Of a stretch of 64,000 nt of DNA, positions 19,903 through 64,000 are shown one piece after another. Below the pieces are notes generated by a model that saw only the letters and a program-made list of their open reading frames with translations, had not been told where the DNA came from and made no database searches. A program made the position numbers and the translations under genes. Every line of letters begins with the position of its first letter. Positions within the stretch are counted from its first letter, which is position 1. The stretch covers positions 235,911 to 299,910 of IMG/VR virus record IMGVR_UViG_3300035070_002626. The stretch is one strand, 5' to 3'.

Positions 19903-19929
19903 ATTAATTCGCTATCGCTCTTAATAGTT

Positions 19930-46900: not shown

Positions 46901-49900
46901 TATTGATTATCATCAAGACACAATTGAATACAAAGCCAGAAGATGGGGACAACTATTTGAAGGTTCCGTTGTAGATGTGTATCAGTGGACAGAAAACACA
47001 GTCCCGCCTAGCGAATATGCAGGTATTGGCGAAGTTTATAGTACCACAAGTTACACCATGACAAGTATGATCGACAGTGTAGGCACTTTTGTAACTTATT
47101 ATTACTATTGGGTTAAAGGTATTACAAGTGTAAGTCCAAGCAAAACGCTGAGTGCTGCTGGAGTTACACAGTATATTGCAAATCCACGTAGTAGTGGTAT
47201 TAGCTATGCAGCCGCACTATCGCCTAGCACAACAGCACTATACAATTGTAATAGTCTTATTAGTGCTAAAGATACAATTTTGCACATCGAGTTTGATAAA
47301 ATTGCAAACACCGACAACGTTCATGCTGAATATGACTTGATTACTGTTGGTAATCCTAGTAGTTTCTTAGGTGCTGGGCTTTATAGAAAGTTGCTTGATA
47401 GTTTCTGCGGCGAAGATACATTGGGCAACATAGTACCTGATGCGACATTGAGCATAGCAGACAAGTACGGAGTTAACTTCCGTCCAAGACAGAGTATGTT
47501 CAAAGATCGATTCCTTGCTCTTGAAAACTATCTATCACGAGCAAATAAAATCATGGCACTGTACCCTCTCACAGACAGCAAAAAGTTTGATTTGCTTAAT
47601 AGCGAAGAACCAGAGCCAACTAAAGTTAGTGGAGCTTGGGATAAACGAGTTGCAACATATGCAGAATTGACATACCAAGATCTACAGCAAGTACCAGTTG
47701 GTTACATATACCTAGTGGCAAGCGACAGCACACAGCAAGGCTTGTGGACAACTTATACAGTACAGGCAAATAAAACATTGTTGCTCAGCAGAGTACAGAC
47801 ATACGATACTAAACTTTATTGGAACTATGTTGACTGGGTAGCAGTAGGGTATGATGCATCGGTTAAGCCAACAACCGAAGTTGCAGTGTACAGCGACCTA
47901 CTTGCATTAACTCCGGTAAATGGTCAAGCAGTTAAAGTAACTGCAAATAGTTTCGGCAAAAGCGAAATATACCAATGGACTAGTGCTGCTGGTGAATGGG
48001 TGCGTGTGCAGCTTACAGACGGCACAGTTGCAATTAGCAATACTATCTGGGACTATGCAATTGGAAACTATGGTTTTGACACTGAGGTGTTTGATGCACA
48101 AAGATTTGATCAAGCACCAAACACTGAAACACGACAGATTCTTAAAGCTCTAAATGAAGAAATATTTACAACAGATTTAGAAATTTATCGCAATGAGCTG
48201 TTAATTCAAGTATTTGAATTTATTACAACAGAGCAGCTAGCACCAGATTGGCTGTTTAAAACTAGTTTGATTGATGTTTCTCATAAAATTCGTGATTTAC
48301 TTCCGTACCCAATTTACAAACGTGATAATCAAGATTTTGTTAGTGATTATATCGAAGAAGTTAAACCGTACCATGTCCAGATTCGCGAATTTAATTTACG
48401 TTACGAAGGAATTGACAGTTACAACGGCAGTGCTACTGATTTTGATGTGCCAGCATATTATGATGAGCTAAGACAAGGATTTATATCGCCTATCTTGGAC
48501 AACAACGTTGATAATCCGTCATCAGTGAGTAGCTTTCCTAGCACTGATCCAATTTGGCAAACTTGGCCATACAGCCAATGGTTTAACAATTATTTGCTAG
48601 AACTAACTAGTGTTACTGTACTAAACGGCGGCACAGGCTATACTGTTCCCCCGCAAGTTATTGTAACAGGCGATGCTACTACACAAGCAACTATGGAAGC
48701 AAAAGTTAACAGTGCTGGCAATGTGATTAGTATAAGTGTGCTCACACCTGGTAGTGGATATACAACTACTCCAATTATTACTATTTCCGGCGGAAATGGT
48801 GTTGGCGCAACCGCAATTGCAGTGCTTGCACCAAGCTTGATTCGAGATATTGTAACAACAATCAAATATGACAGAATTACTTATAATAGTCAAGTAGTTG
48901 ATTGGCAAGCAAATACAGTGTATACTGCAAATGAGCTTGTACGTTATCCTGTTCCTACTGTTGGCACAGTTAACACAGTGCAAGCAAAAGTTTATCAAGT
49001 AATTACAGATTTTACTAGTGCCTCAACATTTGATCCTGAAAATTTCACAGTAGTTGATCCAACTACACTTGACGGTGCCGACAGAACAATTGGCATGTAT
49101 ACACCGACTCCAAACCAGCCTGGGCGAGAACTAGCACAGTTGATGGCAGGTATTGATTACCCAGGTGTGCAAGTACAAGGACCCGACTTTGATCAAAACA
49201 CTGGCTTTGATGTAGGCAATTATGATGTTAATCCTTTTGACAACCTCGATTTTGGCCCTGAAGGGTTGCCAACATACAGCACAGACATCCTTGATGTTAT
49301 ATACGAAAGCTCGTTTGTTGATTCTTACTTGGGAATACGTGCAACTGATATTAATGTCGAGGGTGGCGAATTTATCGACACATATAGTTCTCATGCACCG
49401 GAAGAACTTGTTCCAGGAAGCGAGTTTGATACACTAGATCTTAAAGTATACACTCGCCCTGGCAGTGATTGGTCTAACAACGGTCACGGGTTTGATATCA
49501 AAGATATTAGTGTTGAGTATACAGGAGTTGGAACAACAGTTAGTTTTGCAAATCTTATGCAGCATCCTGTGGAACTTGAAATTTATAATGAACTTAGTGG
49601 TCAAAATGTAGATCCAAGTACCTACACCATTAACTGGGTTACCAAAGTAATTACATTTAACAGTGGAAACGTAGGAAATGTGTTTGACGTTCAAGTTTAC
49701 GGACTTGGCGGCGGATCACAACTCTATAAAGAAAGTTTTGTAGGCAGTACTATTACTAATGCAACACAGCGTATTAATGTAGCATACACAGAAATTGCCG
49801 AAATGGTTGTATTTGTAAATGGAGCACTGTTTACAAACTACACTTATGCAGCCAGCGGTAGTTTTGCAACAGATGTAACATTTAACACACAACCTACATC

Positions 49901-53583: not shown

Positions 53584-53703
53584 TATAAATACATAGATAC
53601 AAGATGACAACCCAGCTATATAGAAAAATAACTAAAACTACCTAATTGGGAATTCATTATATAGCGTAGGTTACACCTACTAATACAAAGGGAAAAATAA
53701 TTA
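53584..53703 (+). promoter_or_regulatory. Late promoter plus structured 5' leader
   Basis: TATAAATA 53584-53591; GCTATATA/TATATAGC stem (53615-53665); GTAGG-TTACA-CCTAC hairpin (53666-53680). Confidence 0.55.
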
Positions 53704-54630
53704 ATGGCGTACACAGCAGGAGATGTAATCTCACATGCAGATTACAATGATTTCGCTCAAAAAACAGATACAGTTTGGGGCACTGGTGCCGGAACTGACG
53801 GCTACGGGCAAACCAACACAATCGGTACAGTAACTGGTGGTGTTACAATTACAGCGACACAATGGGCAACATTGCTAGCAAGAATAACAAGTGCAGCAAA
53901 CCACCAGGGGTCGACAATTACAGCAATAACAAGTCCGACTGCTGGCGACACTATTTCGGCATATGCTGCATTGGCAACAAACGTTGCAGCGATCCAAAAC
54001 AATAATAATGCCGCTGCTAGTGGCAGTGATGCTACAGCAACTACTACAACAACTAGTGCGTGGACTGCAACTGCAACAACAAGCAAAACTGTTACATTTG
54101 CTAGTGCCGACCAACTGCGTTATTTCTTTAATGCCGGCGGCATGATTAGAATGGGTTTTAGTCGCACAGGCGGAACTGCAAGTGATCAAAACACTTCTTG
54201 GACAAACTTATTAGACCAAGCTGGTACAATTGTATTAACAGGATCTGGTAATCCAGGTTTTACTAAAACTATTGCAGGTGTAACTTACACTGGTACTACT
54301 AGAATTGGTGGCAGCGGCACCCCATCTACACTAGCCGAGGGAATTGGTGCGTATAACCTTACTGGGACAAACCAAACACTTTACAAACAATTCGCTACTA
54401 CATACACTTATACGTCAAACTACACTCAAATTGACGCATCAATTAGTGGAAATGTTATTACGTTCACAGTAACGCTAGCTGATGTCAGTGGTCCAAACGT
54501 ACCCGGCGGACTTGACAGCATCGACGGAACACTTACTATGACTACAACAATTCGTCAACCATCAACTACATACATTGCAAGTACATGGGGTTCAGTAACG
54601 CAGAATGCTGCATCTTGGACGCTAACTTAA
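53704..54630 (+). CDS. Thr-rich virion structural/fibre protein (308 aa)
   Basis: MAYTAGDVI..DYN N-terminus, RYFFNAGG motif; very T/G/A-rich. Confidence 0.7.
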   Translation: MAYTAGDVISHADYNDFAQKTDTVWGTGAGTDGYGQTNTIGTVTGGVTITATQWATLLARITSAANHQGSTITAITSPTAGDTISAYAALATNVAAIQNNNNAAASGSDATATTTTTSAWTATATTSKTVTFASADQLRYFFNAGGMIRMGFSRTGGTASDQNTSWTNLLDQAGTIVLTGSGNPGFTKTIAGVTYTGTTRIGGSGTPSTLAEGIGAYNLTGTNQTLYKQFATTYTYTSNYTQIDASISGNVITFTVTLADVSGPNVPGGLDSIDGTLTMTTTIRQPSTTYIASTWGSVTQNAASWTLT

Positions 54631-54661: not shown

Positions 54662-54982
54662 ATGCTAACTACTAGCATGCAAACAGACCAACTCTCCCAA
54701 AACATTAAAACTAGATTTGATCATCAGCAAGCCAGGATTGTCTTGCGGGAAACGTATCAGGCTAAGATGCTTTTTGCGCATAGTGGCGGTATGTGGAAAG
54801 CATCGCCAGACTTGATTGTGTTGTGTGATTGTTGCCAAGATTCACTTGTAGTACTTGAAGATTATTATAATACACCAGTTAGTGTGGATCCGCGTGAACT
54901 TAAAAAATTAGCAATGCAGAGATGGCAGGAACAAATGAACGCCTGGCAAGCTGAATACAATGAAATTTCTAAACAAAGATGA
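54662..54982 (+). CDS. Hypothetical protein (about 100 aa)
   Basis: ORF track (ATG 54677 is an alternative start); ATGA overlap with the next gene. Confidence 0.65.
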   Translation: MLTTSMQTDQLSQNIKTRFDHQQARIVLRETYQAKMLFAHSGGMWKASPDLIVLCDCCQDSLVVLEDYYNTPVSVDPRELKKLAMQRWQEQMNAWQAEYNEISKQR

Positions 54983-55773
54983 CAACGGGTGCTTTACTTT
55001 TTGCGTTTGACAGTGAAATACAGTATACCAAACTTGCGGTTGAATGTGCTCGTCGAATAAAAGAACACCTCGGCATTCCAGTAACATTAGTCACTGACAA
55101 ACTTGTTGACTCGGGTATGTTCGATAATCAAGTTATAGTTGATCGAGGCAAAAACACCAATAGGCGATATTTTCATGATAGAAAAGAAACAACAACTTGG
55201 TATAACTTCGGCAGAAATGCTGCACTTGACTTGTCTCCTTATGATAGAACGCTATTAGTTGACACAGATTATATGGTCAACAGCGATTCATTAGCGCCGT
55301 TACTGGATAGTTCACAGCCCTTCTTGTGTCACAAACATGTGCGAAGTGTACACCAGCCGTCTCCAAGGCTGCAAAAGTTTGGAACAAAAAATTCACACAT
55401 GTGGTGGGCAACAGTTGTTATTTTTGATCGTCGCAGCCAATTTACACAAGATGTGTTTGATATTTGGAAAATGGTGGAACAAAATTATTCACACTATGGA
55501 GCGATGTTTGGATTTAACACTAAACAATATCGCAACGACTTTGCAATAAGCATTGCATTATTACTAGCCAATGGAAATACACACCCACATCAATGTGAAA
55601 TTCCGTGGCCAATGGCAAATGTAGAAACTGATGTAGAAATTGATTTAGTTGATGATACATGGTGGATCGAATACATCAATGATAAACGCAAAAAGAAAAT
55701 TTGTGTTAAAAATCATGATCTACATGTTATGTGCAAGAGTTATTTGGAGAAACTGTATGCAGTACGAAGCTGA
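54979..55773 (+). CDS. GT-A fold glycosyltransferase-like protein
   Basis: LSPYDRTLLVDTDY (DxD), WWATVVIF, RNDFAISIA; GT8-like. Confidence 0.7.
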   Translation: MTTGALLFAFDSEIQYTKLAVECARRIKEHLGIPVTLVTDKLVDSGMFDNQVIVDRGKNTNRRYFHDRKETTTWYNFGRNAALDLSPYDRTLLVDTDYMVNSDSLAPLLDSSQPFLCHKHVRSVHQPSPRLQKFGTKNSHMWWATVVIFDRRSQFTQDVFDIWKMVEQNYSHYGAMFGFNTKQYRNDFAISIALLLANGNTHPHQCEIPWPMANVETDVEIDLVDDTWWIEYINDKRKKKICVKNHDLHVMCKSYLEKLYAVRS

Positions 55774-56536
55774 TCGAGGATATCTAATTGTTGCAGGAAC
55801 TGCTGACAGTGTTGACTATATTTCCTGTGCAGAAACACTTGCAAAAAGTCTTAAGTACTGGCATCCGGATGTAAAGATTTGTCTAGTTACAGATCATGAA
55901 AACTATGCAAATCCTCTTTTTGATTATGTTAGGCAATTTCCGCAAGGAAACACAGGCGGCTGGTCCACTGATTGGCAAGTATTTTATGCTAGCCCATTTC
56001 ACGAAACTGTAAAACTCGAAGCAGACATGGTTGTCAGTGGCCCGATTGATCATTGGTGGCCACTATATCGAAACATGCCAGTTTGGATTAGCACCGGTGC
56101 ACGAAATTTCCATGGAACCACAACAACTGTGCGAAATTACAGAAAAATATTTGATCATAACAATTTACCTGATGTATATAATGCAATTACTTACTGGAGA
56201 GTAAGCCCTGATGCAGAACGATTCTTTAATAATGTAAAACAATGTTTTTACGATTGGGATAAAATTAAACTCAACATCAAGCTAGGAAGCGACGAAATAG
56301 CTAATACAGATTTAATTTATGCATTAAATGGCAGCGACTTTGTTACTCCGGGAATTGGTCCTCAAATTGTACACATGAAACCTAGAATACTTGGTACTAG
56401 TGCTGACGACTGGGCAAAAGAGCTAACATGGGAAGTAGACGATGGGGTACTACGTATCAACGGGCATAATCAACACGGATTTGTTCACTATCATCAAAAA
56501 GAACTAGCACAGCAATTAGGGCAGTACTATGACTGA
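55757..56536 (+). CDS. GT-A fold glycosyltransferase-like protein (paralogue)
   Basis: SPFHETVKLEADM (D/ExD), YNAITYW, NTDLIYA, C-terminal HY; GGAGA SD supports ATG 55757. Confidence 0.7.
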   Translation: MQYEADRGYLIVAGTADSVDYISCAETLAKSLKYWHPDVKICLVTDHENYANPLFDYVRQFPQGNTGGWSTDWQVFYASPFHETVKLEADMVVSGPIDHWWPLYRNMPVWISTGARNFHGTTTTVRNYRKIFDHNNLPDVYNAITYWRVSPDAERFFNNVKQCFYDWDKIKLNIKLGSDEIANTDLIYALNGSDFVTPGIGPQIVHMKPRILGTSADDWAKELTWEVDDGVLRINGHNQHGFVHYHQKELAQQLGQYYD

Positions 56537-56876
56537 AGAAGAACTAGCACAATTGTTTGACCAAATAATAGCAGACAATAAACCGGTTGACTATGAATAC
56601 AGATTGTACTATAATAAAGAAACTGGAGAACCTTTGTTCTACAGTATGGAAGAACATCACGATGGCGATTACATTACAGTAACACAGAAACAGCACAGCG
56701 AAGGTCGGTATGATATCCTTGTTCTCAAAGGCAGCATTGTCAGACGAAATGATGCAGTTAGTTGGACAAAACTAGCACCATCCGAGTCGGGTACTAGGTG
56801 CAGAGCTGACAATGCAATGATTGTGGATAACAACAGTGATATTAAGTGGGCTAGTAAAACATATTATCTAAAGTAA
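56529..56876 (+). CDS. Hypothetical protein (115 aa)
   Basis: ORF track; overlaps the upstream stop. Confidence 0.65.
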   Translation: MTEEELAQLFDQIIADNKPVDYEYRLYYNKETGEPLFYSMEEHHDGDYITVTQKQHSEGRYDILVLKGSIVRRNDAVSWTKLAPSESGTRCRADNAMIVDNNSDIKWASKTYYLK

Positions 56877-56904
56877 ATACTTTATATAATAAGGAAAATA
56901 TTAA

Positions 56905-57234
56905 ATGAAGTATATACTAAATGCATTTATTGCAGGACTACTAGTACCAACTACAGTGTTGTCACAAGAACAAGAGACTAAATTTTTTCTTACTACACAA
57001 CCTTGTGCACCAGTTATTCAAATAACCGACACGATTATGAACAAGTATGGCGAAAAACCTTTGCACAGTGGCAGAGGCATGCAACGGAGTTCATCTGACA
57101 GCAAAGAGTATTGGAGTTCAATGATGTTTTTTGTTAACCAAGACTCGGGCACCTGGACCTTGGTAAGTCTGTATGAAGACGGAACAGCGTGTTTGGTTGC
57201 TAATGGCGGTGAGTTTAAACCTTACTCAAAGTAA
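56905..57234 (+). CDS. Small protein with signal-peptide-like N-terminus
   Basis: MKYILNAFIAGLLVPTTVLS; TAAATA 56874-56879; AAGGA SD. Confidence 0.65.
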   Translation: MKYILNAFIAGLLVPTTVLSQEQETKFFLTTQPCAPVIQITDTIMNKYGEKPLHSGRGMQRSSSDSKEYWSSMMFFVNQDSGTWTLVSLYEDGTACLVANGGEFKPYSK

Positions 57235-57248
57235 ATTATGGAGTTAAC

Positions 57249-58175
57249 ATGGATTCAATTGATATTGCCGATTTGGACTGTATCTATCTTTCTTACGATG
57301 AACCACAAAAAGAAGAGTTTTGGGTTAAGATACGCAACATGGTTCCGTGGGCAAAACGTGTTGATGGTGTAGAAGGCAGCGATGCTGCACACAAAGCCGC
57401 AGCACAAGCAAGTGACACTGAGCGTTTTATATTAATTGACGGCGACAATTTGCCCGAAGAGTCTTTTTTCAATCAAACCATTGAATACAAAGACAGTAGC
57501 TACGAAAAAGCAGTTTATCGCTGGAGAGCACGTAATCATGTTAATGGATTGATGTACGGCAATGGCGGTATGAGTTCTTGGACAAAAGAGTTTGTTATGA
57601 ACATGCGCACACATGAAGCAAGCGAAGGTGCTGATGACACTGATGTAGAGTTTTGTTTTGATCCACTGTACTGGCCGATGTACAATTGCTATTCAACTAC
57701 ACACCCAAATGGAAGTGCTAAACATGCTTGGCGGGCCGGCTTTCGTGAAGGTGTAAAGATGTGCCTTGACAGAGGACGCAAACCAACTGTTGGTGAATTT
57801 AAAGAACGAGTACACAGTCGCAATCTCGATCACTTGACCATCTGGCAAAATGTGGGCAGCGATGCAGATTACGGTCTGTGGGCAATTGCCGGTGCAAGAC
57901 TTGGTACATACAAAACCATGCTCACTGATTGGAACCACAAAGAAGTGCAATGGTTCGATAATCTAGAACAAATTTGGAATGATATAGAAAACACCGATCC
58001 ACTTAACATAATCGAAGAACATGCTAATGCATTAAACAGACAATTAGATTTGCCAATGAGCACATTTTCTCCAGAGCAGAGTAAGTTTTTTAAACATCAC
58101 TATCGCAGCAATTGGAACAATAAAAATATCATGACACGAGAAATTGATGTTATTCGCAGCCAAGAAGGTTGGTAA
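57249..58175 (+). CDS. Glycosyltransferase-like (nucleotide-diphospho-sugar transferase) protein
   Basis: YLSYDEP, AHKAAA, FILIDGDN (DxD), GLMYGNGG, AWRAGFREGVKM; GGAG SD. Confidence 0.65.
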   Translation: MDSIDIADLDCIYLSYDEPQKEEFWVKIRNMVPWAKRVDGVEGSDAAHKAAAQASDTERFILIDGDNLPEESFFNQTIEYKDSSYEKAVYRWRARNHVNGLMYGNGGMSSWTKEFVMNMRTHEASEGADDTDVEFCFDPLYWPMYNCYSTTHPNGSAKHAWRAGFREGVKMCLDRGRKPTVGEFKERVHSRNLDHLTIWQNVGSDADYGLWAIAGARLGTYKTMLTDWNHKEVQWFDNLEQIWNDIENTDPLNIIEEHANALNRQLDLPMSTFSPEQSKFFKHHYRSNWNNKNIMTREIDVIRSQEGW

Positions 58176-58176
58176 T

Positions 58177-59238
58177 GTGAAAGAGTTGTTTGCTAATCTT
58201 GACGCTAACTACAGGCATACATTGAAAGCAATGCCACGGGGCCAGACTGAATCTCGCCCAATCACATTTAGTTGCAATGTTCCGCATAAAGTTGTATCAA
58301 TTGATGATAACTTAAATTGTTTAGTATGCCTGTGTGATGGATGGCTTCCGCTTCCTGTAGGACAAGTACATGATTTTGAAAGTTTAGTTGACGTATTTTC
58401 TAGTCCAAAAGCAAAAATTCTACAAGATGATGTTGACGCAAAAAACTATACATGGTGTGCTGTGCAACATTGCGGAATTAAATACGGCAACATCGAGCAA
58501 TCGCATTACGAATTAGCCATTAACATTGATAGAAGTTGTAATTTACAATGTCCTAGTTGTCGTCGAGACAAGTTTATGTTAACATCGGGACCAATGTACG
58601 ACAAGAAGATCGCAGCATCAAATCGAATTTTAAGTTGGCTAGAAAAATTCGATGATAAGATTAACATTGTACTAAGCGGTGATGGAGATCCACTGGCTAG
58701 CTTGGTTGTTCGCCCAATAATTAAAAACTGGAAGTACAAACCTAATCAAACTCTTATACTAAAAACTAACGGGTTGTTATTACGGAAACAACTTCAAAAC
58801 ACTGAAATTCTTAAAAATGCATTTTTAAGTATAAGCATTGACGCTGGTAGTAAAGAAGTTTTTGAAAGTATTCGTCGTGGCGGTAATTGGGAAGTTTTAC
58901 TAGACAATTTTGATTTTTTAGTTAAGAATGACAAGCAACAAGTCACTACATTGAATTTTACTATACAAAATGATAATTATCTTGATTTAGAAAACTTTGT
59001 AGAGCTTTGTGAAAAATATCAGTTTCAGGGTTCTGTGGCTAAATTAGATGACTGGGGAACCTGGAATGATAAAACAGTTTCTAATCCAGACGAATGGACT
59101 CAAGAAAATGGTTACTTTTTTGAACATGATGTGTTACACTTAGAGCATGAGAATTACGAAGCAGCTAGACAAATATGCACCAAGTTTTTAAATCATCCAC
59201 TAGTGGGTATGAATCCGTCGGTGTTGGAAAGATTGTAA
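58177..59238 (+). CDS. Radical SAM protein
   Basis: CNLQCPSC, SGDGDPL, KTNG, SISIDAG; Cys-rich N-terminus. GTG 58177 preferred to the track start 58144. Confidence 0.88.
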   Translation: MKELFANLDANYRHTLKAMPRGQTESRPITFSCNVPHKVVSIDDNLNCLVCLCDGWLPLPVGQVHDFESLVDVFSSPKAKILQDDVDAKNYTWCAVQHCGIKYGNIEQSHYELAINIDRSCNLQCPSCRRDKFMLTSGPMYDKKIAASNRILSWLEKFDDKINIVLSGDGDPLASLVVRPIIKNWKYKPNQTLILKTNGLLLRKQLQNTEILKNAFLSISIDAGSKEVFESIRRGGNWEVLLDNFDFLVKNDKQQVTTLNFTIQNDNYLDLENFVELCEKYQFQGSVAKLDDWGTWNDKTVSNPDEWTQENGYFFEHDVLHLEHENYEAARQICTKFLNHPLVGMNPSVLERL

Positions 59239-59900
59239 TGACTGGAGGAATGGTAATTGGATTTTATCCTGGTGCAGGTGGGCATAGGTATTATAATTCA
59301 CTAATCAATCGATCATTTGGTAAATCAGAGACAGTTTATGATAATGCCCCAACTGATTACAACGCACGTTACACAACCAATCAATCACATTCAACATATA
59401 CAGATATAGTTAGCAGTCATTGTGTAAACTACACAACATTAAAAAATTGTTATGTAAATCAAAATAATTTTACAATTATTCGAAGTGACCTTAAACGGAG
59501 TTTGTTTAGAGAATATAGATTAATTGGAAGAGAAAGATATTTACGAAATAAAATACAAGCAGAACCTGACTCTGTTAAACTTGAGCATTATCAACATTAT
59601 AAAGATAGCGCATGGCCAGATGTGTACACTATTAAACAGTATTACAGTTTGCCTGCATGGATTCAGAATGAAGTTAACAACGACCGCAAGCAGGTAGCAG
59701 AGAACATTGATTTTTTAGCAGCAGAAGCCACAATAGAATTTCACTACGATTATTACAACCAATACCCGTTTGAAATTGGCGGCGCTAAAATTGTTGATAT
59801 TGATCAAGATGACAACGAATTTTGTGCCGTTATGAGACAAGAGCTTGCAGTACCATTCTCTGAAGAATTTAATCAAGCATGGGAGAACATAGTTGGTTAA
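59238..59900 (+). CDS. Hypothetical protein, P-loop/sulfotransferase-like N-terminus
   Basis: TAATG start; IGFYPGAGG motif and YKDSAWPD motif. Confidence 0.5.
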   Translation: MTGGMVIGFYPGAGGHRYYNSLINRSFGKSETVYDNAPTDYNARYTTNQSHSTYTDIVSSHCVNYTTLKNCYVNQNNFTIIRSDLKRSLFREYRLIGRERYLRNKIQAEPDSVKLEHYQHYKDSAWPDVYTIKQYYSLPAWIQNEVNNDRKQVAENIDFLAAEATIEFHYDYYNQYPFEIGGAKIVDIDQDDNEFCAVMRQELAVPFSEEFNQAWENIVG

Positions 59901-60882
59901 TAGTTATACAGGATTTGGCAAACTACGTGAAGTTTGGTTAGGTGATTGCTACCCTGCAGAGTTTTATTCCGATTATGCACCAGCAGTGCGTGATGCATTT
60001 GAGCGTATAACCGAAATAACAAAGGAAGATCTTGCAAACATTGAATCTGTACTTACAGGGCTTAATGTACAGGTACGCAGACCTGTGTTTTCTAATAACA
60101 AAGAAGATTATACAAACAACAACGGTGCGCTGATTAAACCGCCGATCATGCCACGTGATGATAACTTGGTATTAGGAAAACAGTTTTTTCATTTACGAAA
60201 CCGATATCGTGTTGACCCCTGGCAGTCACATTTACCTGACAGTGTCGAAACCATTACAGCAGAACTTGAATGTTTGCAACCTCCTAGTATTGTTCGCTGC
60301 GGCAGAGATTTGTATATCGATCGAGACTCGCATCAACACATATGGGGAATGGTAGGCAGTACGTTTTTAGACTGGGCACAAGACTACCGAGTGCATATTA
60401 TTGATACAGGCGGACACAGTGATGGTGTTTTTTGCCCAGTGGCACCTGGGATTATTGTTGCAAGTTGCTGGATGGAGGAGTACAGTCAAACTTTTCCTGG
60501 CTGGGAAGTATTCCAATTACCAAAGGAACGTGTTGAACATTTTGGCAAATGGTGGATAGATGATCACACTGTGTCTAACAACAACGAGTTTGCCGACCAT
60601 ATAAATAAATTCGCAATCGATTGGATTGGGGACTTTACAGAAACACAATTTAGTGTTAATATGTTAGTAGTAGATTCAAAGACTGTAATCAGTGTAAATG
60701 AAAATCGTGAACTAAATGACTTTTTAGATCAACGTGGGATTAATGTCATTATTGCACCATTCCGTGCCAAGAGCTTCTGGGACGGGGGATTGCATTGTCT
60801 AACAGTAGACACAGTTCGCGACGATACACAACAGGATTTTTTTCCCGAGCGCGGCAACAGAAATTATTTGGATTGGATGTAA
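59893..60882 (+). CDS. Amidinotransferase (glycine/inosamine-phosphate amidinotransferase family)
   Basis: VNSYTGFGKLREVWLG, MPRD, GHSDG, FWDGGLHC (catalytic Cys) pentein motifs. Confidence 0.85.
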   Translation: MVNSYTGFGKLREVWLGDCYPAEFYSDYAPAVRDAFERITEITKEDLANIESVLTGLNVQVRRPVFSNNKEDYTNNNGALIKPPIMPRDDNLVLGKQFFHLRNRYRVDPWQSHLPDSVETITAELECLQPPSIVRCGRDLYIDRDSHQHIWGMVGSTFLDWAQDYRVHIIDTGGHSDGVFCPVAPGIIVASCWMEEYSQTFPGWEVFQLPKERVEHFGKWWIDDHTVSNNNEFADHINKFAIDWIGDFTETQFSVNMLVVDSKTVISVNENRELNDFLDQRGINVIIAPFRAKSFWDGGLHCLTVDTVRDDTQQDFFPERGNRNYLDWM

Positions 60883-62309
60883 TGCAAAACAAAGGCGACG
60901 AAGTCGATGCAGACTTTAAAAGTAAATTTTTAAGTGATGCAGAAATTGCACAACAAAAATTAGACACAGTAAGTCCTAGCATGTGTCTTGCTAAGTGGAA
61001 GCAACTCAGCTTGCACCTTACCACTGGAATGAACAACAGTTGTTATCATCCGCCATTACACAGGGCAGATGCAGTAGCTATTAAGAAAAATCCTAGTGCG
61101 TTACATAATACGGACTATAAAAAGCAACAACGCAAGCTAATGCTAGAAGGTGTGCGACCAAACGAATGTGACTACTGCTGGAAGATGGAAGACAACGGAA
61201 AACTAAGCGATAGGCATTATCGCAGTGGCGAACCATGGGCAATTAAAGACTTTGAAAAAATAACAAATGCAAATTGGGATGAAGATATCACTCCTAGTTA
61301 TGTTGAAGTAGACTTTAACAGTGCATGCAATCTAAGTTGTAGCTATTGTTCACCACAATATAGTTCGACTTGGATGGCCGAAACAGAAAAGCATGGTGCT
61401 TGGCCAACTAGTACACCACACAATGATCCTGCACACTTTACAGGAGAACGCAAGCCTATACCTGCTAGGGAATACAATCCATATGTAGAAGCCTTTTGGG
61501 AATGGTGGCCTACCTTGTATCCAGAGTTAGAACACTTTCGGATGACAGGCGGTGAGCCACTAATGGATAAAAATACATATCGAGTATTTGATCATGTGTT
61601 AGCTAATCCCAAACCAGACTTGCATTTAAGTACAACATCTAACTTTAGTGTAGATGAAAAATTGTGGCAAAAATACAAAAATTATGTATACAAGTTGTGC
61701 AGTACACACGGCAATGTAGAACACTTCATGCAGTATGTGAGCTTGGACGGGATGTTCGAACAAGTAGAATATGTACGGCACGGGCTTGACTTTGAGCTGT
61801 TGTGGGACAGAGTGCATCAATTCTTGCGTGATATACCAGAACGTAATAGTGTTACATTTATTGTAACAATGAGTAATCTAAGCGTGACCACGCTGCACAA
61901 ATTGTTTGCTGCTATACTTGAACTAAGACAAACATACAGCACAACATATCAACGAGTGTGGTTTGATACCCCAGTGTTGCGTACACCAACTTGGCAAAGT
62001 TTGCAACTGCTACCTGAGAGCTATGTATATGAACTTGAAGCTATCAAGACTTGGATGCTAGATAATCTTGAAACTGAAGCCACCCGGTTTCACGGATTTA
62101 AGGACTATGAAGTTAACCGTTTGGACAGAGACATTGCCTGGATGCGCAATGGGCAAAAATTATCTCCAGAATACATTAATCGTAATAAAGCAGATTTCTA
62201 TAGGTTTTTCAACGAGCATGACCGTCGACGCAACACAGACTTTTTAAGAACATTCCCAGAAATGACAGACTGGTGGAATGATTGTAAATATCAAGCCATT
62301 AACACATAA
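60882..62309 (+). CDS. Radical SAM protein with N-terminal SPASM/twitch-like cluster domain
   Basis: C..KW...SCYH...CDYCW, then CNLSCSYC, TGGEPL, TTSN, SLDG; TAATG start. Confidence 0.9.
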   Translation: MQNKGDEVDADFKSKFLSDAEIAQQKLDTVSPSMCLAKWKQLSLHLTTGMNNSCYHPPLHRADAVAIKKNPSALHNTDYKKQQRKLMLEGVRPNECDYCWKMEDNGKLSDRHYRSGEPWAIKDFEKITNANWDEDITPSYVEVDFNSACNLSCSYCSPQYSSTWMAETEKHGAWPTSTPHNDPAHFTGERKPIPAREYNPYVEAFWEWWPTLYPELEHFRMTGGEPLMDKNTYRVFDHVLANPKPDLHLSTTSNFSVDEKLWQKYKNYVYKLCSTHGNVEHFMQYVSLDGMFEQVEYVRHGLDFELLWDRVHQFLRDIPERNSVTFIVTMSNLSVTTLHKLFAAILELRQTYSTTYQRVWFDTPVLRTPTWQSLQLLPESYVYELEAIKTWMLDNLETEATRFHGFKDYEVNRLDRDIAWMRNGQKLSPEYINRNKADFYRFFNEHDRRRNTDFLRTFPEMTDWWNDCKYQAINT

Positions 62310-62323
62310 GAGATACATACATT

Positions 62324-63676
62324 ATGCCCAAGCAAAATAACGAAACAGATTTACAATATAAAAATCGGGTGCTCGATCCATTGAGTTCCAGTATGTGCGG
62401 AGCTAAATGGTACAACGCTACTATATGGCTAGGATCAGGAATGACCACTAGCTGTCACCATCCTTTGCCTCATCATATATCTGTTGAAGAAGTGCAAGCA
62501 AACCCAAAAGCATTACACAACACTCCTCGCAAAAAAGAAGAACGTAGACAAATGCAATGCGGCGAACGCCCAAGCGGATGCGAATATTGCTGGAAAATTG
62601 AGGACATTGGCAGAGATAATATATCTGACAGAACATATAAAAGTGTAATCTACTCAGATGAAGATTTGCAATCAGCACATGCACTGGATTATAACGAAGA
62701 TGTTGATCTTAAAACATTGGAAATTGCATTTGATAGAACTTGTCAGTTTGCTTGCAGTTATTGCAATCCAGCATTTAGTTCAACCTGGGTTAAAGATCTG
62801 AAAAAACACGGTGCATACGAAGATTTAATCAGTGATGGTCGCAATCATTTTACGCACACACATGACAGTAATCAACTGTACACTTACAACGAAACAAACC
62901 CATACATTGAAGCGTTTTTTAAATGGTGGGAAAGCGACTTGCATAGAACACTCGACGAATTACGTATCACAGGCGGCGAACCAGCAATGAGCGGCCACTT
63001 GTGGAAGTTGCTTGACTGGTTTAAAGAAAATAAAGGCGCAAGCACCACACGAATTGCAATCAACAGTAACTTGGGCCTTGCTACTGCTGATATGGAAAAA
63101 TTGCTTGACAGAGCTGCTAGTGCGCCACTGGACATTTATACATCAAATGAAAGTATGCCAGTACAAGCAGAATACATCCGTGACGGACTAGAATGGGAAA
63201 CTTGGGATCGAAACATGCACATGTTGGCCAATTCGGGTAAAATACGTGGGTTGCACAATATGTGCACAATCAACGCATTGTGCTTGGAAACACTTCCTGA
63301 GTTTTTGGATTATCTACTAACATTCAAACAAACGTATGGCAGAGATTTCCCAAGCTTTACGTTAAACATTTTACGTTTTCCTAGTTTCCAAAGCCCATTG
63401 GTATTGCCAGACGAAATTCGAATGTTGCATAAAGATCGTTTGCAAAATTGGCTAAACACAAACAGAGACAATACATTATTGCACGAACATGAAATTAACC
63501 AAACTGAACGATTGATTGACTATCTTGATGTTGTTAAAACACCACACAGCGACACATTTGATATGCCAAAACTACACAACGACTTTAAACGTTTTTATAC
63601 ACAGTACGACAAGCGCAGAGGTAAAGACTTTGCTACTGCATTTCCTAGCATGAAAGATTGGTACAATGAGCTATAG
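62324..63676 (+). CDS. Radical SAM protein, paralogue of the upstream gene
   Basis: C..KW...SCHH...CEYCW, then CQFACSYC, TGGEP, NSN. Confidence 0.9.
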   Translation: MPKQNNETDLQYKNRVLDPLSSSMCGAKWYNATIWLGSGMTTSCHHPLPHHISVEEVQANPKALHNTPRKKEERRQMQCGERPSGCEYCWKIEDIGRDNISDRTYKSVIYSDEDLQSAHALDYNEDVDLKTLEIAFDRTCQFACSYCNPAFSSTWVKDLKKHGAYEDLISDGRNHFTHTHDSNQLYTYNETNPYIEAFFKWWESDLHRTLDELRITGGEPAMSGHLWKLLDWFKENKGASTTRIAINSNLGLATADMEKLLDRAASAPLDIYTSNESMPVQAEYIRDGLEWETWDRNMHMLANSGKIRGLHNMCTINALCLETLPEFLDYLLTFKQTYGRDFPSFTLNILRFPSFQSPLVLPDEIRMLHKDRLQNWLNTNRDNTLLHEHEINQTERLIDYLDVVKTPHSDTFDMPKLHNDFKRFYTQYDKRRGKDFATAFPSMKDWYNEL

Positions 63677-64000
63677 TTATAACAGTGCCGATCCAATTAA
63701 GATTAGGCTAGCAGATGTAAGTGAAAGAGAACGTGAACTTCTGTCTGAAAGTAAAACATTTTGTATGTACCCGTGGATACACTTGCATGCTTATCCTACA
63801 GGCGAAGCATACCCTTGTTGTCATGCCGAAATGGGTGTTGGTCAAGTTGGAAACTGCAAAAACAACACAATGGAAGAGATTTGGAATAGCCCAGAGCAAA
63901 AGCAACTGCGCAAAGACATGCTGTTAGAACAAGAAAACCCTGCGTGTGGACGTTGTTACGAACAAGAGAAAAGTGGATTCTTTAGTGGCCGTCAAAGTGC
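63666..64000 (+). CDS. SPASM/twitch-led radical SAM protein, 5' part only
   Basis: Not in the ORF track; ATG 63666 open to the window end: FCMYPWIHL..YPTGEAYPCC...EEIWNS...CGRCYEQE. Confidence 0.8.
   Translation, partial: MSYSYNSADPIKIRLADVSERERELLSESKTFCMYPWIHLHAYPTGEAYPCCHAEMGVGQVGNCKNNTMEEIWNSPEQKQLRKDMLLEQENPACGRCYEQEKSGFFSGRQS

What the first reader, a model, noticed from the sequence alone, without database searches (positions are those of the whole stretch)
54662..64000. Late-linked glycosyltransferase / radical SAM / amidinotransferase cluster: candidate virion-decoration pathway
Seen: directly after the fibre genes, on the same strand, many overlapping or coupled, with TAAATA boxes at 53586 and 56874 and no clear terminator or sigma70 promoter found: three GT-like genes, at least four radical SAM genes, an amidinotransferase and a sulfotransferase-like ORF. 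Maf-like, pyruvyltransferase-like, SGNH-like and a fifth radical SAM gene lie elsewhere. Known: some phages glycosylate virion proteins; radical SAM and transferase sets also hypermodify phage DNA. Inference: an undescribed pathway building a heavily tailored glycan on S/T-rich virion proteins. DNA or host-surface modification are alternatives, although no base-modification precursor genes lie in this window.
Basis: partly seen in the sequence, partly recalled or inferred. Interest (0 to 1): 0.78.

Follow-up and report, generated by a model that had tools for sequence, protein, structure and literature searches.

The report
Jumbo-phage glycan and radical-SAM island
The region is the start of a large, late-promoter-linked gene island found in a worldwide lineage of T4-like jumbo phages; it pairs glycosyltransferases with a row of unusual radical SAM enzymes and most likely builds a tailored sugar coat on the phage's serine/threonine-rich fibres, a chemistry not yet described for any virus.

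Summary
Window 54662-64000 is a tightly coupled, same-strand gene row directly after the fibre genes of a marine T4-like jumbo phage (a 299,910-bp metagenome contig, 86% complete).

Confirmed:
- Four radical SAM genes. Three belong to NCBIfam NF033640 (N-terminal twitch domain); the last is cut by the contig end.
- An amidinotransferase.
- Three glycosyltransferase-fold genes. AF2 models show a retaining GT8-like pair that are paralogues, and a GT2-like GT-A.
- TAAATA(C) is a genuine promoter-like motif across the genome.

Not supported: the 'sulfotransferase-like' ORF.

New context:
- The row is only the front of an island of about 25-30 kb that runs past the contig end. In a 99% relative, three more twitch radical SAM genes follow, then a carbamoyltransferase.
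- The conserved core is the S/T-rich fibre, the three GTs, the twitch radical SAM array and the carbamoyltransferase. It keeps its gene order in hundreds of IMG/VR contigs.
- Near-complete relatives carry 8-16 matches to the twitch radical SAM model.
- The amidinotransferase, the orphan ORF and the extra radical SAM gene are a strain-specific insert.
- Bacterial homologues of the twitch enzymes sit in polysaccharide loci.
- The phage lineage lacks lipid-carrier priming and export genes and the DNA-modification entry enzymes I tested.

Glycosylation of virion fibres is the best reading but is unproven.

The parts
53584..53591 (+). TATAAATA late-promoter-like box, the last one before the first half of the cluster
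   Evidence: The motif class is enriched about 9-fold upstream of ORF starts genome-wide. There is no further box and no terminator excess between here and 56874.
53704..54630 (+). Fibre-like protein, 308 aa, 30% Ser+Thr, no Cys; candidate glycan acceptor
   Evidence: It is the most S/T-rich ORF of the window. An S/T-rich ORF (0.23-0.34) sits at this position in 61 of 62 related loci, against a background median of 0.117. Homologues occur in 58/80 and 79/80 loci.
54662..54982 (+). Conserved small protein (106 aa; JGI start 54677), function unknown
   Evidence: Present in 67/80 and 79/80 related loci. No family hit.
54979..55773 (+). GT8-like retaining GT-A glycosyltransferase (paralogue a)
   Evidence: AF2 pLDDT 91.8, pTM 0.90. 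Foldseek PDB gives 344 hits at E<=1e-3; the top ones are GlyE, alpha-1,3-GalT/GTB, glycogenin and the UGGT catalytic domain. The DxD motif (D95, D97) is invariant in 45 orthologues. Present in 71/80 loci.
55757..56536 (+). GT8-like glycosyltransferase (paralogue b)
   Evidence: hhalign against paralogue a: probability 99.4%, E 6e-21, 235 columns. The ExD motif (E88, D90) is invariant. 4 of 44 orthologues weakly hit Mannosyl_trans3. PHROG 1903. Present in 72/80 loci.
56529..56876 (+). Conserved small protein (115 aa), function unknown
   Evidence: Present in 34/80 and 73/80 loci. No family hit.
56874..56880 (+). TAAATAC late-promoter-like box, 31 nt before 56905
   Evidence: It matches the extended consensus derived from 61 upstream sites.
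56905..57234 (+). Small protein (109 aa) with a signal-peptide-like N-terminus; accessory
   Evidence: It has the only hydrophobic N-terminal segment in the island (KD19 1.52). Present in 7/80 and 18/80 loci. PHROG 25396.
57249..58175 (+). GT2-like GT-A glycosyltransferase with a C-terminal helical domain; the most conserved GT of the core
   Evidence: AF2 pLDDT 91.3. Top Foldseek hit is the PBCV-1 A64R capsid-glycosylating GT (1.6e-4), then WrtF, TarP and SunS/ThuS. VIA Z is 8-9.4 over residues 3-154 against GT-A enzymes, but also against IspD-type nucleotidyltransferases. 20 of 45 orthologues weakly hit Glyco_tranf_2_3. The DGD motif is nearly invariant. Present in 73/80 loci at 64% median identity.
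58147..59238 (+). Radical SAM enzyme (CX3CX2C, extra N-terminal Cys cluster); accessory
   Evidence: Pfam Radical_SAM 3.6e-11; NCBIfam SPASM/twitch-type hits all below their cut-offs. Present in 11/80 loci. RNA-library and relatives' contigs do not cover 58277-60476.
59238..59900 (+).
   Evidence: No hit in Pfam, NCBIfam or PHROGs. ESM Atlas best score 0.57. No similarity to a real sulfotransferase. Present in 4/80 loci. Absent from the 99% relatives L004/L077. Skipped by a relative's contig, which joins 59240 to 60834.
59893..60882 (+). Amidinotransferase-fold enzyme (AGAT/HsvA/SxtG/StrB1 relatives); accessory
   Evidence: PDB phmmer 5e-10 to 1e-6. The catalytic Cys (GGLHC) and His (GGHSD) are kept; AGAT Asp254 is replaced by Gln. 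A paralogue lies at contig 3574-4599(-), 29% identical. Absent from the 99% relatives.
60882..62309 (+). N-terminal-twitch radical SAM enzyme, paralogue 1 (core)
   Evidence: NF033640, 308.8 bits (cut-off 170). Four N-terminal Cys, CX3CX2C and GGEP are invariant among six paralogues. Present in 80/80 loci.
62285..62290 (+). TAAATA box, 39 nt before 62324 (weaker: followed by T, not C)
62324..63676 (+). N-terminal-twitch radical SAM enzyme, paralogue 2 (core)
   Evidence: NF033640, 294.3 bits. At least 596 IMG/VR relatives. More than 8000 proteins in the 5.8-billion-protein set, the best 120 at 70-88% identity.
63666..64000 (+). N-terminal-twitch radical SAM enzyme, paralogue 3, cut by the contig end
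   Evidence: NF033640, 95 bits on model positions 1-82. The full gene (428 aa) is present in the 99% relative L077. This paralogue is the closest to the bacterial homologues (31-37% identity).

Best explanation
Window 54662-64000 is the front of a 25-30 kb island that builds and tailors a glycan. The island is a conserved hallmark of a cosmopolitan lineage of T4-like jumbo phages.

**Shown**
- The conserved core, always in the same order, is:
  - an S/T-rich fibre gene;
  - a small protein;
  - two paralogous retaining GT8-like glycosyltransferases;
  - a GT2-like glycosyltransferase;
  - a tandem array of three to six N-terminal-twitch radical SAM enzymes, each with a SAM cluster and one auxiliary 4-Cys site;
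  - a carbamoyltransferase further on.
- This strain carries an insert holding an extra radical SAM gene, an orphan ORF and an amidinotransferase. Beyond the contig end it also has Kdo-8-P synthase-like, CMP-sugar synthetase-like and FkbM methyltransferase genes.

**Inferred**
- The genes are transcribed late, with the fibre genes, from TAAATA(C) promoters.
- The soluble GTs put sugars on Ser/Thr of the fibre protein encoded just upstream, and perhaps on other S/T-rich virion proteins.
- The twitch radical SAM enzymes then tailor individual sugar residues by hydrogen-atom abstraction: oxidation to keto-sugars, epimerisation or dehydration, as BtrN does on an aminocyclitol.
- The keto groups can be aminated (a DegT aminotransferase is encoded). 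Amines can be amidinated and hydroxyls carbamoylated or methylated.
- The product would be a heavily modified coat on the fibres that changes adsorption, stability or recognition.
For: **Gene identities**
- Radical SAM and twitch family. BtrN's twitch domain aligns to the N-terminal 21-98 of the paralogue profile.
- GT folds.
- GT paralogy.
- Amidinotransferase.
- Carbamoyltransferase, FkbM, CMP-sugar synthetase, KdsA fragment, DegT, GFO/IDH/MocA and epimerase at the contig start.

**Conservation and synteny**
- At least 596 IMG/VR stretches relate to the twitch radical SAM gene and 415 to the GT2-like gene.
- Counts over 80 loci are.
- The same order appears in 343-357 kb near-complete genomes.

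**Glycan context for the radical SAM family**
- In a complete Crocinitomicaceae chromosome (L105), three twitch/SPASM radical SAM genes lie among genes for UDP-Glc dehydrogenase, an epimerase, a carbamoyltransferase, a GT1/GT4 fusion, a sulfotransferase, GDSL proteins and an ABC transporter.
- 11 of 79 genome-collection loci also hold a carbamoyltransferase and 9 a DegT. These counts include mis-binned phage contigs.

**Acceptor**
- S/T-rich ORF upstream in 61 of 62 loci.
- No transmembrane helices in the enzymes.
- No WbaP, WecA, Wzx or ABC-2 exporter in six genomes of the lineage, four of them 91-100% complete.
- The nearest solved folds include protein-glycosylating GTs: GlyE, glycogenin, UGGT, PBCV-1 A64R and SunS/ThuS.

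**Late linkage**
- TAAATA(C) occurs 67 times versus 7.6 expected upstream of ORFs. It stands before the portal, tail-lysozyme, baseplate and fibre genes and at 53586, 56874 and 62285.
- No sigma70 or terminator excess.

**Presence in nature**
- Marine metatranscriptome libraries hold relatives' core genes.
Against: - No experiment or data set shows a glycan on any virion protein of this lineage.
- Fibre proteins are often S/T-rich for structural reasons.
- Adjacency in a late operon does not prove a substrate relation.
- The GT-A fold also covers nucleotidyltransferases; the VIA search lists IspD at similar Z. TM-scores are moderate (0.3-0.47).
- The radical SAM chemistry is inferred only from family context. 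The best PDB sequence match of the radical SAM core is a RiPP maturase, 8vpo.
- Late timing rests on analogy with T4; I did not look for a gp55-type sigma factor.
- The RNA-library contigs could stem from DNA carry-over.
- The contig is 86% complete, and the middle of the island is known only from relatives.
Confidence: 0.5

Rival explanations
1. Host-envelope remodelling. The island makes or alters a host surface polysaccharide, LPS or capsule during infection. This could block superinfection or stop progeny from sticking to debris. It would use the host's lipid carrier, priming enzyme and exporters.
For: - The enzyme set mirrors bacterial polysaccharide loci.
- This strain adds Kdo-8-P synthase and CMP-sugar synthetase genes, which are typical of LPS or capsule sugars.
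- A small protein with a signal-like N-terminus lies in the cluster.
- From general knowledge: many phages carry O-antigen-modifying genes, and marine myoviruses carry LPS-type genes.
Against: - There is no priming phosphoglycosyltransferase, flippase or ABC-2 exporter in six genomes of the lineage.
- None of the enzymes has a membrane segment.
- The genes sit in the late structural operon behind late-type promoters. That timing is poor for changing the surface of a cell about to lyse.
- The order is strictly conserved next to an S/T-rich fibre gene.
Confidence: 0.17
2. Direct protein or small-molecule chemistry. The twitch radical SAM enzymes do not act on sugars. They either modify the fibre or other virion proteins directly (RiPP-like cross-links or epimerisation) or make a diffusible metabolite, with the GTs acting separately.
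For: - Most characterised SPASM/twitch enzymes are peptide maturases.
- The best PDB sequence match of the core is the RiPP cyclopropyl synthase 8vpo; SkfB and YydG also appear.
- Another radical SAM/SPASM gene lies between the portal and prohead protease genes.
- Amidinotransferase plus carbamoyltransferase also occur in saxitoxin and aminoglycoside pathways (for SxtG and StrB1; the rest is general knowledge).
Against: - Bacterial members of this family sit in polysaccharide loci with no precursor peptide or RRE evident.
- In related phage contigs the radical SAM genes are interleaved with another conserved family of putative transferases.
- The adjacent fibre has no Cys, which excludes thioether chemistry on it.
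- No core scaffold-forming enzyme (PKS, NRPS or cyclase) was seen in the parts annotated.
Confidence: 0.15
3. DNA hypermodification. The GTs and tailoring enzymes decorate bases of the phage genome, as in T-even glucosylation or thymidine hypermodification, to evade restriction.
For: - From general knowledge: phage DNA hypermodification pathways can include glycosyltransferases and radical SAM enzymes.
- Cationic amidino groups would suit charge neutralisation in a jumbo head.
Against: - The contig has no thymidylate-synthase-family hydroxymethylase. Two relatives that are 91% and 99% complete carry the island and also lack one. ThyX is present instead.
- No TGT/DpdA in six genomes.
- The cluster is in the late fibre operon rather than among replication genes.
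- The nearest solved GT folds act on proteins or glycans.
Confidence: 0.08

Closest known systems
Virus-encoded virion glycosylation: chlorovirus PBCV-1 (A64R, PDB 2P6W) and mycobacteriophage capsid/tail O-glycosylation
   Same: - Soluble, virus-encoded GT-A enzymes that act without the host secretory or lipid-carrier route.
- In mycobacteriophages the GT genes lie next to structural genes (general knowledge).
- A64R is the top Foldseek hit of the GT2-like protein.
   Different: - No sequence-level relationship: 11-13% identity.
- Those systems have no radical SAM enzymes, amidinotransferase or carbamoyltransferase.
- Glycosylation is demonstrated there and only inferred here.
Serine-rich-repeat adhesin and flagellin glycosylation systems of bacteria (GlyE/GT8 on PsrP; Maf plus CMP-nonulosonic acid islands)
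   Same: - Retaining GT8-fold enzymes acting on S/T-rich filament proteins. GlyE is the top Foldseek hit of 54979-55773.
- CMP-activated ulosonic-acid genes and a weak Maf/MptE-like match next to S/T-rich head proteins occur in the same genome.
- Flagellin sugars are known to carry amidino-type decoration (general knowledge).
   Different: - The Maf-like match is sub-threshold: 18 bits against a cut-off of 34.6.
- There are no Pse/Leg pathway genes.
- Those systems are cellular and lack radical SAM arrays.
Bacterial polysaccharide loci carrying NF033640-type radical SAM genes (for example Crocinitomicaceae locus L105)
   Same: The same radical SAM family occurs together with a carbamoyltransferase, an epimerase, GTs and SGNH/GDSL proteins.
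   Different: - The bacterial loci include an ABC transporter and a membrane-anchored GT fusion.
- The phage lineage has no export or priming genes.
- Identity is only 23-39%.
- The function of the bacterial enzymes is also unknown.
Aminoglycoside/aminocyclitol tailoring enzymes (BtrN, StrB1, TobZ-type carbamoyltransferases)
   Same: - Twitch-type auxiliary cluster: the BtrN twitch domain aligns to the N-terminal Cys region, E 0.0025.
- StrB1, AGAT and SxtG are PDB relatives of the amidinotransferase.
- NodU/CmcH-family carbamoyltransferase.
- The logic is oxidise, aminate, amidinate or carbamoylate.
   Different: - In BtrN the twitch domain is C-terminal; here it is N-terminal.
- There are no cyclitol synthase or 2-DOS genes.
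- The resemblance is one of chemistry, not of pathway membership.
Phage DNA hypermodification (T-even glucosylation; thymidine hypermodification with radical SAM isomerases)
   Same: Phage-encoded GTs and radical SAM enzymes acting on a phage macromolecule.
   Different: - The entry enzymes are missing: no hydroxymethylase family and no TGT.
- The cluster has a late, structural-operon location.

Membership tests
NCBIfam NF033640 (N-terminal twitch radical SAM) | Whole-protein score above the curated cut-off of 170 bits | tested here: met
   308.8 bits (60795/60882-62309) and 294.3 bits (62324-63676). The truncated third gene scores 95 bits on the first 82 positions, and its full-length 99% orthologue exists in L077.
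NCBIfam NF033640 (N-terminal twitch radical SAM) | CX3CX2C SAM-cluster motif and GGE SAM-binding motif | tested here: met
   C149, C153, C156 and G223-G224-E225-P226 are invariant in six paralogues.
NCBIfam NF033640 (N-terminal twitch radical SAM) | Auxiliary Fe-S (twitch) Cys set placed N-terminal to the radical SAM core | tested here: met
   Four invariant N-terminal Cys: C35, C54, C96, C99. The BtrN twitch region aligns to profile positions 21-98, E 0.0025. SPASM-domain models hit the N-terminus of paralogue 3. Cluster binding itself is not testable here.
Radical SAM superfamily (58147-59238) | Pfam PF04055 above the gathering score, with CX3CX2C | tested here: met
   44 bits against a cut-off of 29.5. 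The CNLQCPSC motif is in the translation. It reaches no specific NCBIfam cut-off.
Amidinotransferase (AGAT / StrB1 / HsvA, pentein fold) | Significant sequence similarity to characterised members | tested here: met
   HsvA 5.1e-10, AGAT 6.6e-9, SxtG 1.4e-6, StrB1 1.4e-3. The Pfam ADI match is below its cut-off, 16.8 against 22.8.
Amidinotransferase (AGAT / StrB1 / HsvA, pentein fold) | Catalytic Cys-His-Asp triad (AGAT C407, H303, D254) | tested here: inconclusive
   Cys (GGLHC) and His (GGHSD) align. The D254 position is Gln in the phmmer alignment. The alignment is weak in that stretch.
Retaining GT-A glycosyltransferases (GT8/GT6/GT24-like): 54979-55773 and 55757-56536 | GT-A fold | tested here: met
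   AF2 pLDDT 91.8. 344 PDB matches at E<=1e-3, all top ones retaining GT-A enzymes, TM 0.41-0.47. The second gene is included by profile homology.
Retaining GT-A glycosyltransferases (GT8/GT6/GT24-like): 54979-55773 and 55757-56536 | Conserved DxD metal/nucleotide-sugar motif | tested here: met
   D95/D97 and E88/D90 are invariant in 45 and 44 orthologues. I did not check their position in the model.
Retaining GT-A glycosyltransferases (GT8/GT6/GT24-like): 54979-55773 and 55757-56536 | Sequence membership of Pfam GT8 (PF01501) or a related family | tested here: not met
   No hit above threshold. There are only scattered sub-threshold Mannosyl_trans3 or GT2 hits in 1-4 orthologues. So this is GT8-like by fold, not a member of PF01501.
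GT2-type GT-A glycosyltransferase: 57249-58175 | GT-A fold with DxD | tested here: met
   AF2 pLDDT 91.3. Foldseek top hits are A64R, WrtF, TarP and SunS (18 hits at E<=1e-3). VIA Z is 8-9.4 over residues 3-154, although IspD-type nucleotidyltransferases score similarly. DGD is nearly invariant.
GT2-type GT-A glycosyltransferase: 57249-58175 | Pfam GT2 family score above the gathering threshold | tested here: not met
   The window protein has no hit. 20 of 45 orthologues hit Glyco_tranf_2_3 and 9 hit Glycos_transf_2, only at E 0.001-1.
Sulfotransferase (59238-59900) | Any sequence or feature similarity to sulfotransferase families | tested here: not met
   No hit in Pfam, NCBIfam or PHROGs. 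BLASTP against a Pfam-confirmed sulfotransferase gives E 0.81. The ESM Atlas best score is 0.57, with unrelated clusters.
T4-type late transcription unit | TATAAATA-like box upstream of late (structural) genes, enriched over chance | tested here: met
   67 observed against 7.6 expected in upstream windows. The extended consensus is (A)TAAATAC. It stands before the portal, PKD-protein, tail-lysozyme, baseplate and fibre genes, and before 56905 and 62324.
T4-type late transcription unit | gp55-type late sigma factor; late timing of transcripts | not tested
   No gp55 model or trusted sequence was at hand. Timing needs infection time-course RNA.
Und-P-dependent surface polysaccharide pathway | Priming phosphoglycosyltransferase and a flippase or ABC-2 exporter | tested here: not met
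   PF02397, PF00953, PF01943 and PF01061 are absent from G000-G005, four of which are 91-100% complete.
Phage DNA hypermodification | Entry enzyme: dNMP hydroxymethylase (thymidylate-synthase family) or DpdA/TGT | tested here: not met
   PF00303 is absent in G000, G001 and G002 and present in 3 of 5 relatives tested. PF01702 is absent in all six.
Phage virion glycosylation | Glycan covalently bound to virion proteins | not testable with these tools
   This needs purified virions. No cultured member of the lineage is known apart from the distant RsoM2USA.

The most novel reading that the evidence does not exclude
A globally distributed lineage of T4-like jumbo phages has expanded one radical SAM family to roughly ten paralogues per genome. 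It uses them, arrayed with glycosyltransferases in the late fibre operon, as residue-specific radical tailoring enzymes acting on a protein-bound glycan. That would be a virus-encoded, lipid-carrier-independent glycan-editing system with chemistry unknown in any glycosylation pathway. The twitch radical SAM family (more than 6,700 clusters at 50% identity with E<=1e-30) would then be a large unexplored class of carbohydrate-modifying radical enzymes.
Probability: 0.3. Interest if true: 0.88.

Novelty: new variant of a known kind. Interest (0 to 1): 0.72.

Why it matters
- **Virus glycobiology.** If the reading is right, these abundant marine and freshwater jumbo phages coat their fibres with a glycan made entirely by phage enzymes and edited by radical chemistry. 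That would extend virus-encoded glycosylation, known from chloroviruses, giant viruses and mycobacteriophages, to a new chemistry.
- **Enzymology.** It would give a biological role to a very large, uncharacterised radical SAM family that also sits in bacterial polysaccharide loci.
- **Phage ecology.** It would point to a mechanism by which fibres could change host recognition or resist proteases and grazers.
- **Annotation.** Whatever the acceptor turns out to be, finding 8-16 matches to one radical SAM family per phage genome, conserved at 60-88% identity across hundreds of contigs, defines a clear target for enzymology. It also marks this phage lineage in metagenomes.

Tried and rejected
**Searches that gave nothing useful**
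- Megablast of the region against 50,697 phage records: no match.
- tblastn found only Ralstonia phage RsoM2USA, with everything annotated as hypothetical. Its paper mentions none of these genes.
- Pfam, NCBIfam and PHROGs gave nothing usable for the three GT-like genes, the small proteins or the orphan ORF. Sequence and profile searches of PDB sequences also failed for the GTs.
- Six-frame searches with Mannosyl_trans3 and Glyco_transf_10 found nothing. For the latter the control rang nowhere, so the result is uninformative.
- From a remembered motif I guessed that the paralogous family at contig 4596-5801, 5765-6877 and 14972-16075 is fucosyltransferase-like. That guess remains untested and I do not rely on it.
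- Literature searches found no description of this module. The terms covered twitch radical SAM, jumbo phage with radical SAM and carbamoyltransferase, DNA hypermodification with carbamoyltransferase, and huge phages with radical SAM and GT.

**Tool failures**
- The genome-collection scan with the six-paralogue alignment failed for lack of conserved stretches. It was redone with orthologues of one paralogue.
- An exact-match look-up of a bacterial homologue was not on record. The Nitratireductor context was uninformative: TPR proteins and a methyltransferase.

**Ideas rejected**
- A full T4 TATAAATA octamer as the promoter: only 4 in the window, which is chance level. The shorter TAAATA(C) core is what is enriched.
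- MetK and MTA-nucleosidase-like genes as core support for radical SAM turnover. They are real in the 99% relative L077 but absent from four near-complete relatives, so they are accessory.
- The contig ends as a circular junction: they do not overlap, and the joined frame is not continuous.

Full report
**What the window is.**
- The window is the last 64 kb of a single 299,910-bp contig with 40% G+C. The contig is a JGI metagenome assembly that IMG/VR classes as linear, and CheckV estimates it to be 86% complete.
- It is a T4-like jumbo phage. It encodes a Gp23 major capsid protein (3.6e-99), a Gp20 portal, a prohead protease, a gp25-like wedge, a VgrG-like spike and an SLT tail lysozyme.
- The capsid protein is 60-66% identical to those of PA5oct, Rak2-like phages, Vibrio phage 2.275.O and Sinorhizobium phage Phosso.
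- Near-identical DNA occurs in at least 17 marine or seawater metagenome runs from about a dozen studies.

**Checking the observation.**
- Every gene from 26784 to the window end is on the + strand. The cluster begins 31 nt after the fibre-like gene 53704-54630. Its genes overlap by 1-29 nt or are separated by 14-28 nt.
- Four radical SAM genes are real:
  - 58147-59238 (PF04055, 3.6e-11);
  - 60882-62309 and 62324-63676 (NCBIfam NF033640, the 'twitch domain-containing radical SAM protein' family, 309 and 294 bits against a cut-off of 170);
  - 63666 onward, which is cut by the contig end.
- 59893-60882 is an amidinotransferase-fold protein. PDB hits are HsvA 5e-10, AGAT, SxtG and StrB1. The catalytic Cys and His are kept, but the AGAT Asp254 position aligns with Gln.
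- The three GT-like genes gave nothing in Pfam, NCBIfam or sequence searches of the PDB. Structure prediction settled the matter:
  - 54979-55773 (pLDDT 91.8) has 344 PDB matches at E<=1e-3. All the top ones are retaining GT-A enzymes: GlyE, alpha-1,3-GalT/GTB, glycogenin and the UGGT catalytic domain.
  - 55757-56536 is its paralogue (hhalign 99.4%, E 6e-21).
  - 57249-58175 (pLDDT 91.3) has an N-terminal GT-A domain. Its best Foldseek match is the PBCV-1 A64R capsid-glycosylating enzyme, followed by WrtF, TarP and SunS/ThuS. VIA Z is 8-9.4, with IspD-type nucleotidyltransferases close behind.
  - DxD-type motifs are invariant or nearly so in 44-45 orthologues of each.
- The 'sulfotransferase-like' ORF (59238-59900) has no support of any kind.

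**Promoter boxes.**
- The full T4 octamer TATAAATA occurs only four times in the window, which is chance level.
- The hexamer TAAATA is depleted overall (35 against 68.6 expected). Genome-wide it is concentrated 5-70 nt upstream of ORF starts on the same strand: 67 of 220 copies against 7.6 expected. Unrelated AT-rich control hexamers show 1.5-3x.
- The extended consensus is (A)TAAATAC, mostly 22-42 nt before the ATG. It precedes the portal, PKD-protein, tail-lysozyme, baseplate and fibre genes. In or near the cluster it stands at 53586, 56874 and 62285.
- Sigma70-like and terminator-like sites are at chance level.
- Late co-expression with the fibre genes is therefore a reasonable inference from the T4 paradigm. 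Timing itself was not tested.

**The cluster is the front of a larger island.**
- The contig start continues on the same strand. It holds the C-terminal part of a Kdo-8-P-synthase-like gene, a CMP-sugar synthetase (CTP_transf_3), a NodU/CmcH carbamoyltransferase and an FkbM methyltransferase.
- On the other strand it holds a second amidinotransferase paralogue, three paralogous proteins of unknown fold, a GFO/IDH/MocA oxidoreductase, a DegT aminotransferase, an NAD epimerase and ThyX.
- The two contig ends do not overlap.
- A 99%-identical IMG/VR contig (L077) bridges the gap. After the third twitch radical SAM gene come, in order:
  - a fourth and a fifth twitch radical SAM gene;
  - a PNP_UDP_1 (MTA-nucleosidase-like) gene;
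  - a small cytidylyltransferase;
  - a sixth twitch radical SAM gene;
  - a conserved 358-aa protein;
  - MetK;
  - the carbamoyltransferase.

**Core and accessory genes.**
- At least 596 IMG/VR stretches encode relatives of 62324-63676, and 415 encode relatives of 57249-58175.
- Over the best 80 loci anchored on the radical SAM gene, the conserved genes are:
  - the fibre 53704 (58 loci);
  - the 106-aa protein (67);
  - the two GT8-like genes (71 and 72);
  - the GT2-like gene (73, at 64% median identity);
  - twitch radical SAM paralogues 1, 2 and 3 (80, 80 and 79);
  - the carbamoyltransferase (59, a count limited by flank length).
- Anchoring on the GT2-like gene gives the same picture: GT8-like upstream in 78 of 79 loci, and a twitch radical SAM gene within 2.5 kb downstream in 63 of 73.
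- The accessory genes are:
  - 58147 radical SAM (11/80);
  - the orphan 59238 (4/80);
  - the amidinotransferase 59893 (17/80, including cross-hits to the paralogue);
  - the 109-aa signal-bearing protein (7/80);
  - the Kdo-type genes (0/80).
- The 99% relatives L004 and L077 lack the orphan and the amidinotransferase. A relative's contig joins 59240 directly to 60834.
- MetK is absent from four near-complete relatives.

**The radical SAM expansion.**
- The window's contig has eight matches to NF033640 (three above the cut-off, plus the truncated one) and at least nine radical SAM genes in all.
- Four relatives of 316-357 kb (91-100% complete) have 8-16 matches each, mostly above the cut-off. 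Five or six of these lie in the tandem array; RsoM2USA has two.
- The paralogues are only 20-34% identical to one another. Each, however, has 60-68% orthologues in distant relatives. The duplications are therefore old.
- All six aligned paralogues keep four N-terminal Cys, CX3CX2C and GGEP.
- A profile of the six finds 6,720 clusters at 50% identity with E<=1e-30 among 1.84 billion representatives. These include fusions of two or three such domains.

**What the family does elsewhere.**
- True bacterial homologues (23-39% identity) occur in Bacteriovoracaceae, Bdellovibrionales, Chitinophagaceae, Crocinitomicaceae, Flavobacteriales and Hyphomicrobiales.
- Of the 79 genome-collection loci (mis-binned phage contigs included), 11 also hold a carbamoyltransferase and 9 a DegT.
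- In a complete Crocinitomicaceae chromosome, three such radical SAM genes lie among genes for UDP-Glc dehydrogenase, an epimerase, a carbamoyltransferase, a GT1/GT4-UbiA-GDSL fusion, a sulfotransferase, GDSL, PhyH and an ABC-transporter ATPase. That is a polysaccharide locus.
- This is the main basis for assigning the phage enzymes to sugar rather than peptide chemistry.
- By sequence, the nearest solved radical SAM core is a RiPP cyclopropyl synthase (8vpo), with viperin, GDGT-MAS, BlsE and SkfB behind it. BtrN's twitch domain aligns to the N-terminal Cys region.

**Which acceptor?**

For virion protein:
- An S/T-rich ORF (0.23-0.34 Ser+Thr) precedes the GT genes in 61 of 62 loci, although its sequence is only about 36% conserved. 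The background median is 0.117.
- All enzymes lack membrane segments.
- Six genomes of the lineage lack WbaP- and WecA-type priming enzymes, Wzx and ABC-2 exporters.
- The nearest solved GT folds include several protein glycosyltransferases.
- Other glycan-type genes are scattered through the structural modules: a weak Maf-like match next to S/T-rich Ig/PKD head proteins, a pyruvyltransferase, and a radical SAM/SPASM gene between portal and protease.

Against DNA:
- No thymidylate-synthase-family enzyme occurs in the contig or in two near-complete relatives.
- No TGT/DpdA occurs in any of the six genomes.

None of this is direct evidence. I put the fibre-glycan model at about 0.5, host-envelope remodelling at 0.17, direct protein or small-molecule chemistry at 0.15 and DNA at 0.08.

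**Expression in nature.** Three marine or salt-marsh metatranscriptome libraries hold contigs 90-97% identical to the core genes (GT2-like, and twitch radical SAM paralogues 1 and 2) but none over the accessory insert. This fits transcription of the core in relatives, but DNA carry-over cannot be excluded.

**Novelty.** Seven literature searches found no description of this module, of radical SAM arrays in jumbo phages, or of a function for NF033640. Virus-encoded virion glycosylation is a known kind. An array of twitch radical SAM enzymes coupled to it would be a new variant with unknown chemistry.

**Limits.**
- The contig is incomplete, and the middle of the island is inferred from relatives.
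- The GT donor sugars, the radical SAM reactions and the acceptor are all inferred.
- The late timing rests on a motif.

Noticed in passing
window 37929-51449 (+): A single 4506-aa ORF lies between the baseplate gene (34518-37925) and the fibre genes. It is acidic (net charge -231) and 14-22% Ser+Thr along its length. Presumably a giant baseplate or fibre protein.
   Followed up: partly
window 11039-12061 (-): A radical SAM plus SPASM gene (PF04055 3.2e-9, SPASM 8.8e-6) sits inside the head-morphogenesis module, between the portal gene (12502-14223) and the prohead protease gene (9248-9874). A TAAATA box lies at each end. It has no PDB sequence relative.
   Followed up: partly
window 600-6044 (-): A weak MptE/Maf-like match (5457-6044; E 0.0026, 35 residues, below the cut-off) lies next to four S/T-rich (22-27%) Ig/PKD-type proteins (600-5460) just downstream of the capsid gene. 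This may be a second protein-glycosylation site, given the CMP-sugar synthetase at the contig start.
   Followed up: partly
window 18023-19885: A polysaccharide pyruvyl transferase (19064-19885, 4e-9) and an ATE_C/FemAB-like protein (18023-18709, 1e-5) lie beside a T4 baseplate protein gene (16491-17351).
   Followed up: no
whole window and contig: The hexamer TAAATA is depleted about two-fold in the window (35 against 68.6 expected) but concentrated about 9-fold upstream of ORF starts. Nine of the upstream sites lie exactly 11 nt from the ATG, which looks like a separate class.
   Followed up: partly
L001 (contig 1-20000): 1-264, 264-941, 920-2458, 2449-3294, 8431-11428 (-): The contig start carries a Kdo-8-P-synthase-like fragment, a CMP-sugar synthetase, a carbamoyltransferase, an FkbM methyltransferase, a GFO/IDH/MocA oxidoreductase, a DegT aminotransferase and an NAD epimerase. 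The Kdo-type genes are absent from all 80 related loci.
   Followed up: partly
L001 13676-14923 (-) and 17982-19073 (-): By eye, these look like a VWA/metallopeptidase-like protein and a MoxR-type AAA ATPase. They are conserved in the relative L161 at 55-70% identity and seem unrelated to the glycan genes.
   Followed up: no
L077 15201-16189 and 18674-19759: The 99% relative carries an MTA/SAH-nucleosidase-like gene (PNP_UDP_1), a small cytidylyltransferase and a complete MetK inside the radical SAM array. That amounts to a SAM supply and 5'-deoxyadenosine disposal kit. It is absent from four near-complete relatives.
   Followed up: yes
contig G000:C1 32587-35011 (-): A second carbamoyltransferase (529-aa frame) lies next to the best-scoring radical SAM gene of the contig (541-aa frame, PF04055 6.6e-20), far from the main island.
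   Followed up: no
L246 (NCBI GCA_027401895.1, 84.5-kb contig): An unrelated contig has at least ten radical SAM genes in a row (some with B12-binding or SPASM domains, one a TPR fusion). They are flanked by a sugar nucleotidyltransferase, a GDSL protein and an asparagine-synthase-type amidotransferase.
   Followed up: no
L085, L086, L090, L161 (genome contigs): Contigs of 19-183 kb filed in MAGs of Haliscomenobacter, Legionellales and Fischerella carry the full phage synteny. They are most likely phage contigs mis-binned into bacterial genomes. In L085 and L086, genes of the 4596-5801 family are interleaved between the twitch radical SAM genes.
   Followed up: partly
window 59240-60834: A contig from a salt-marsh RNA library joins 59240 to 60834 with 18 other letters in between. 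A relative therefore lacks exactly the orphan ORF and the amidinotransferase, which marks the borders of the insert.
   Followed up: yes
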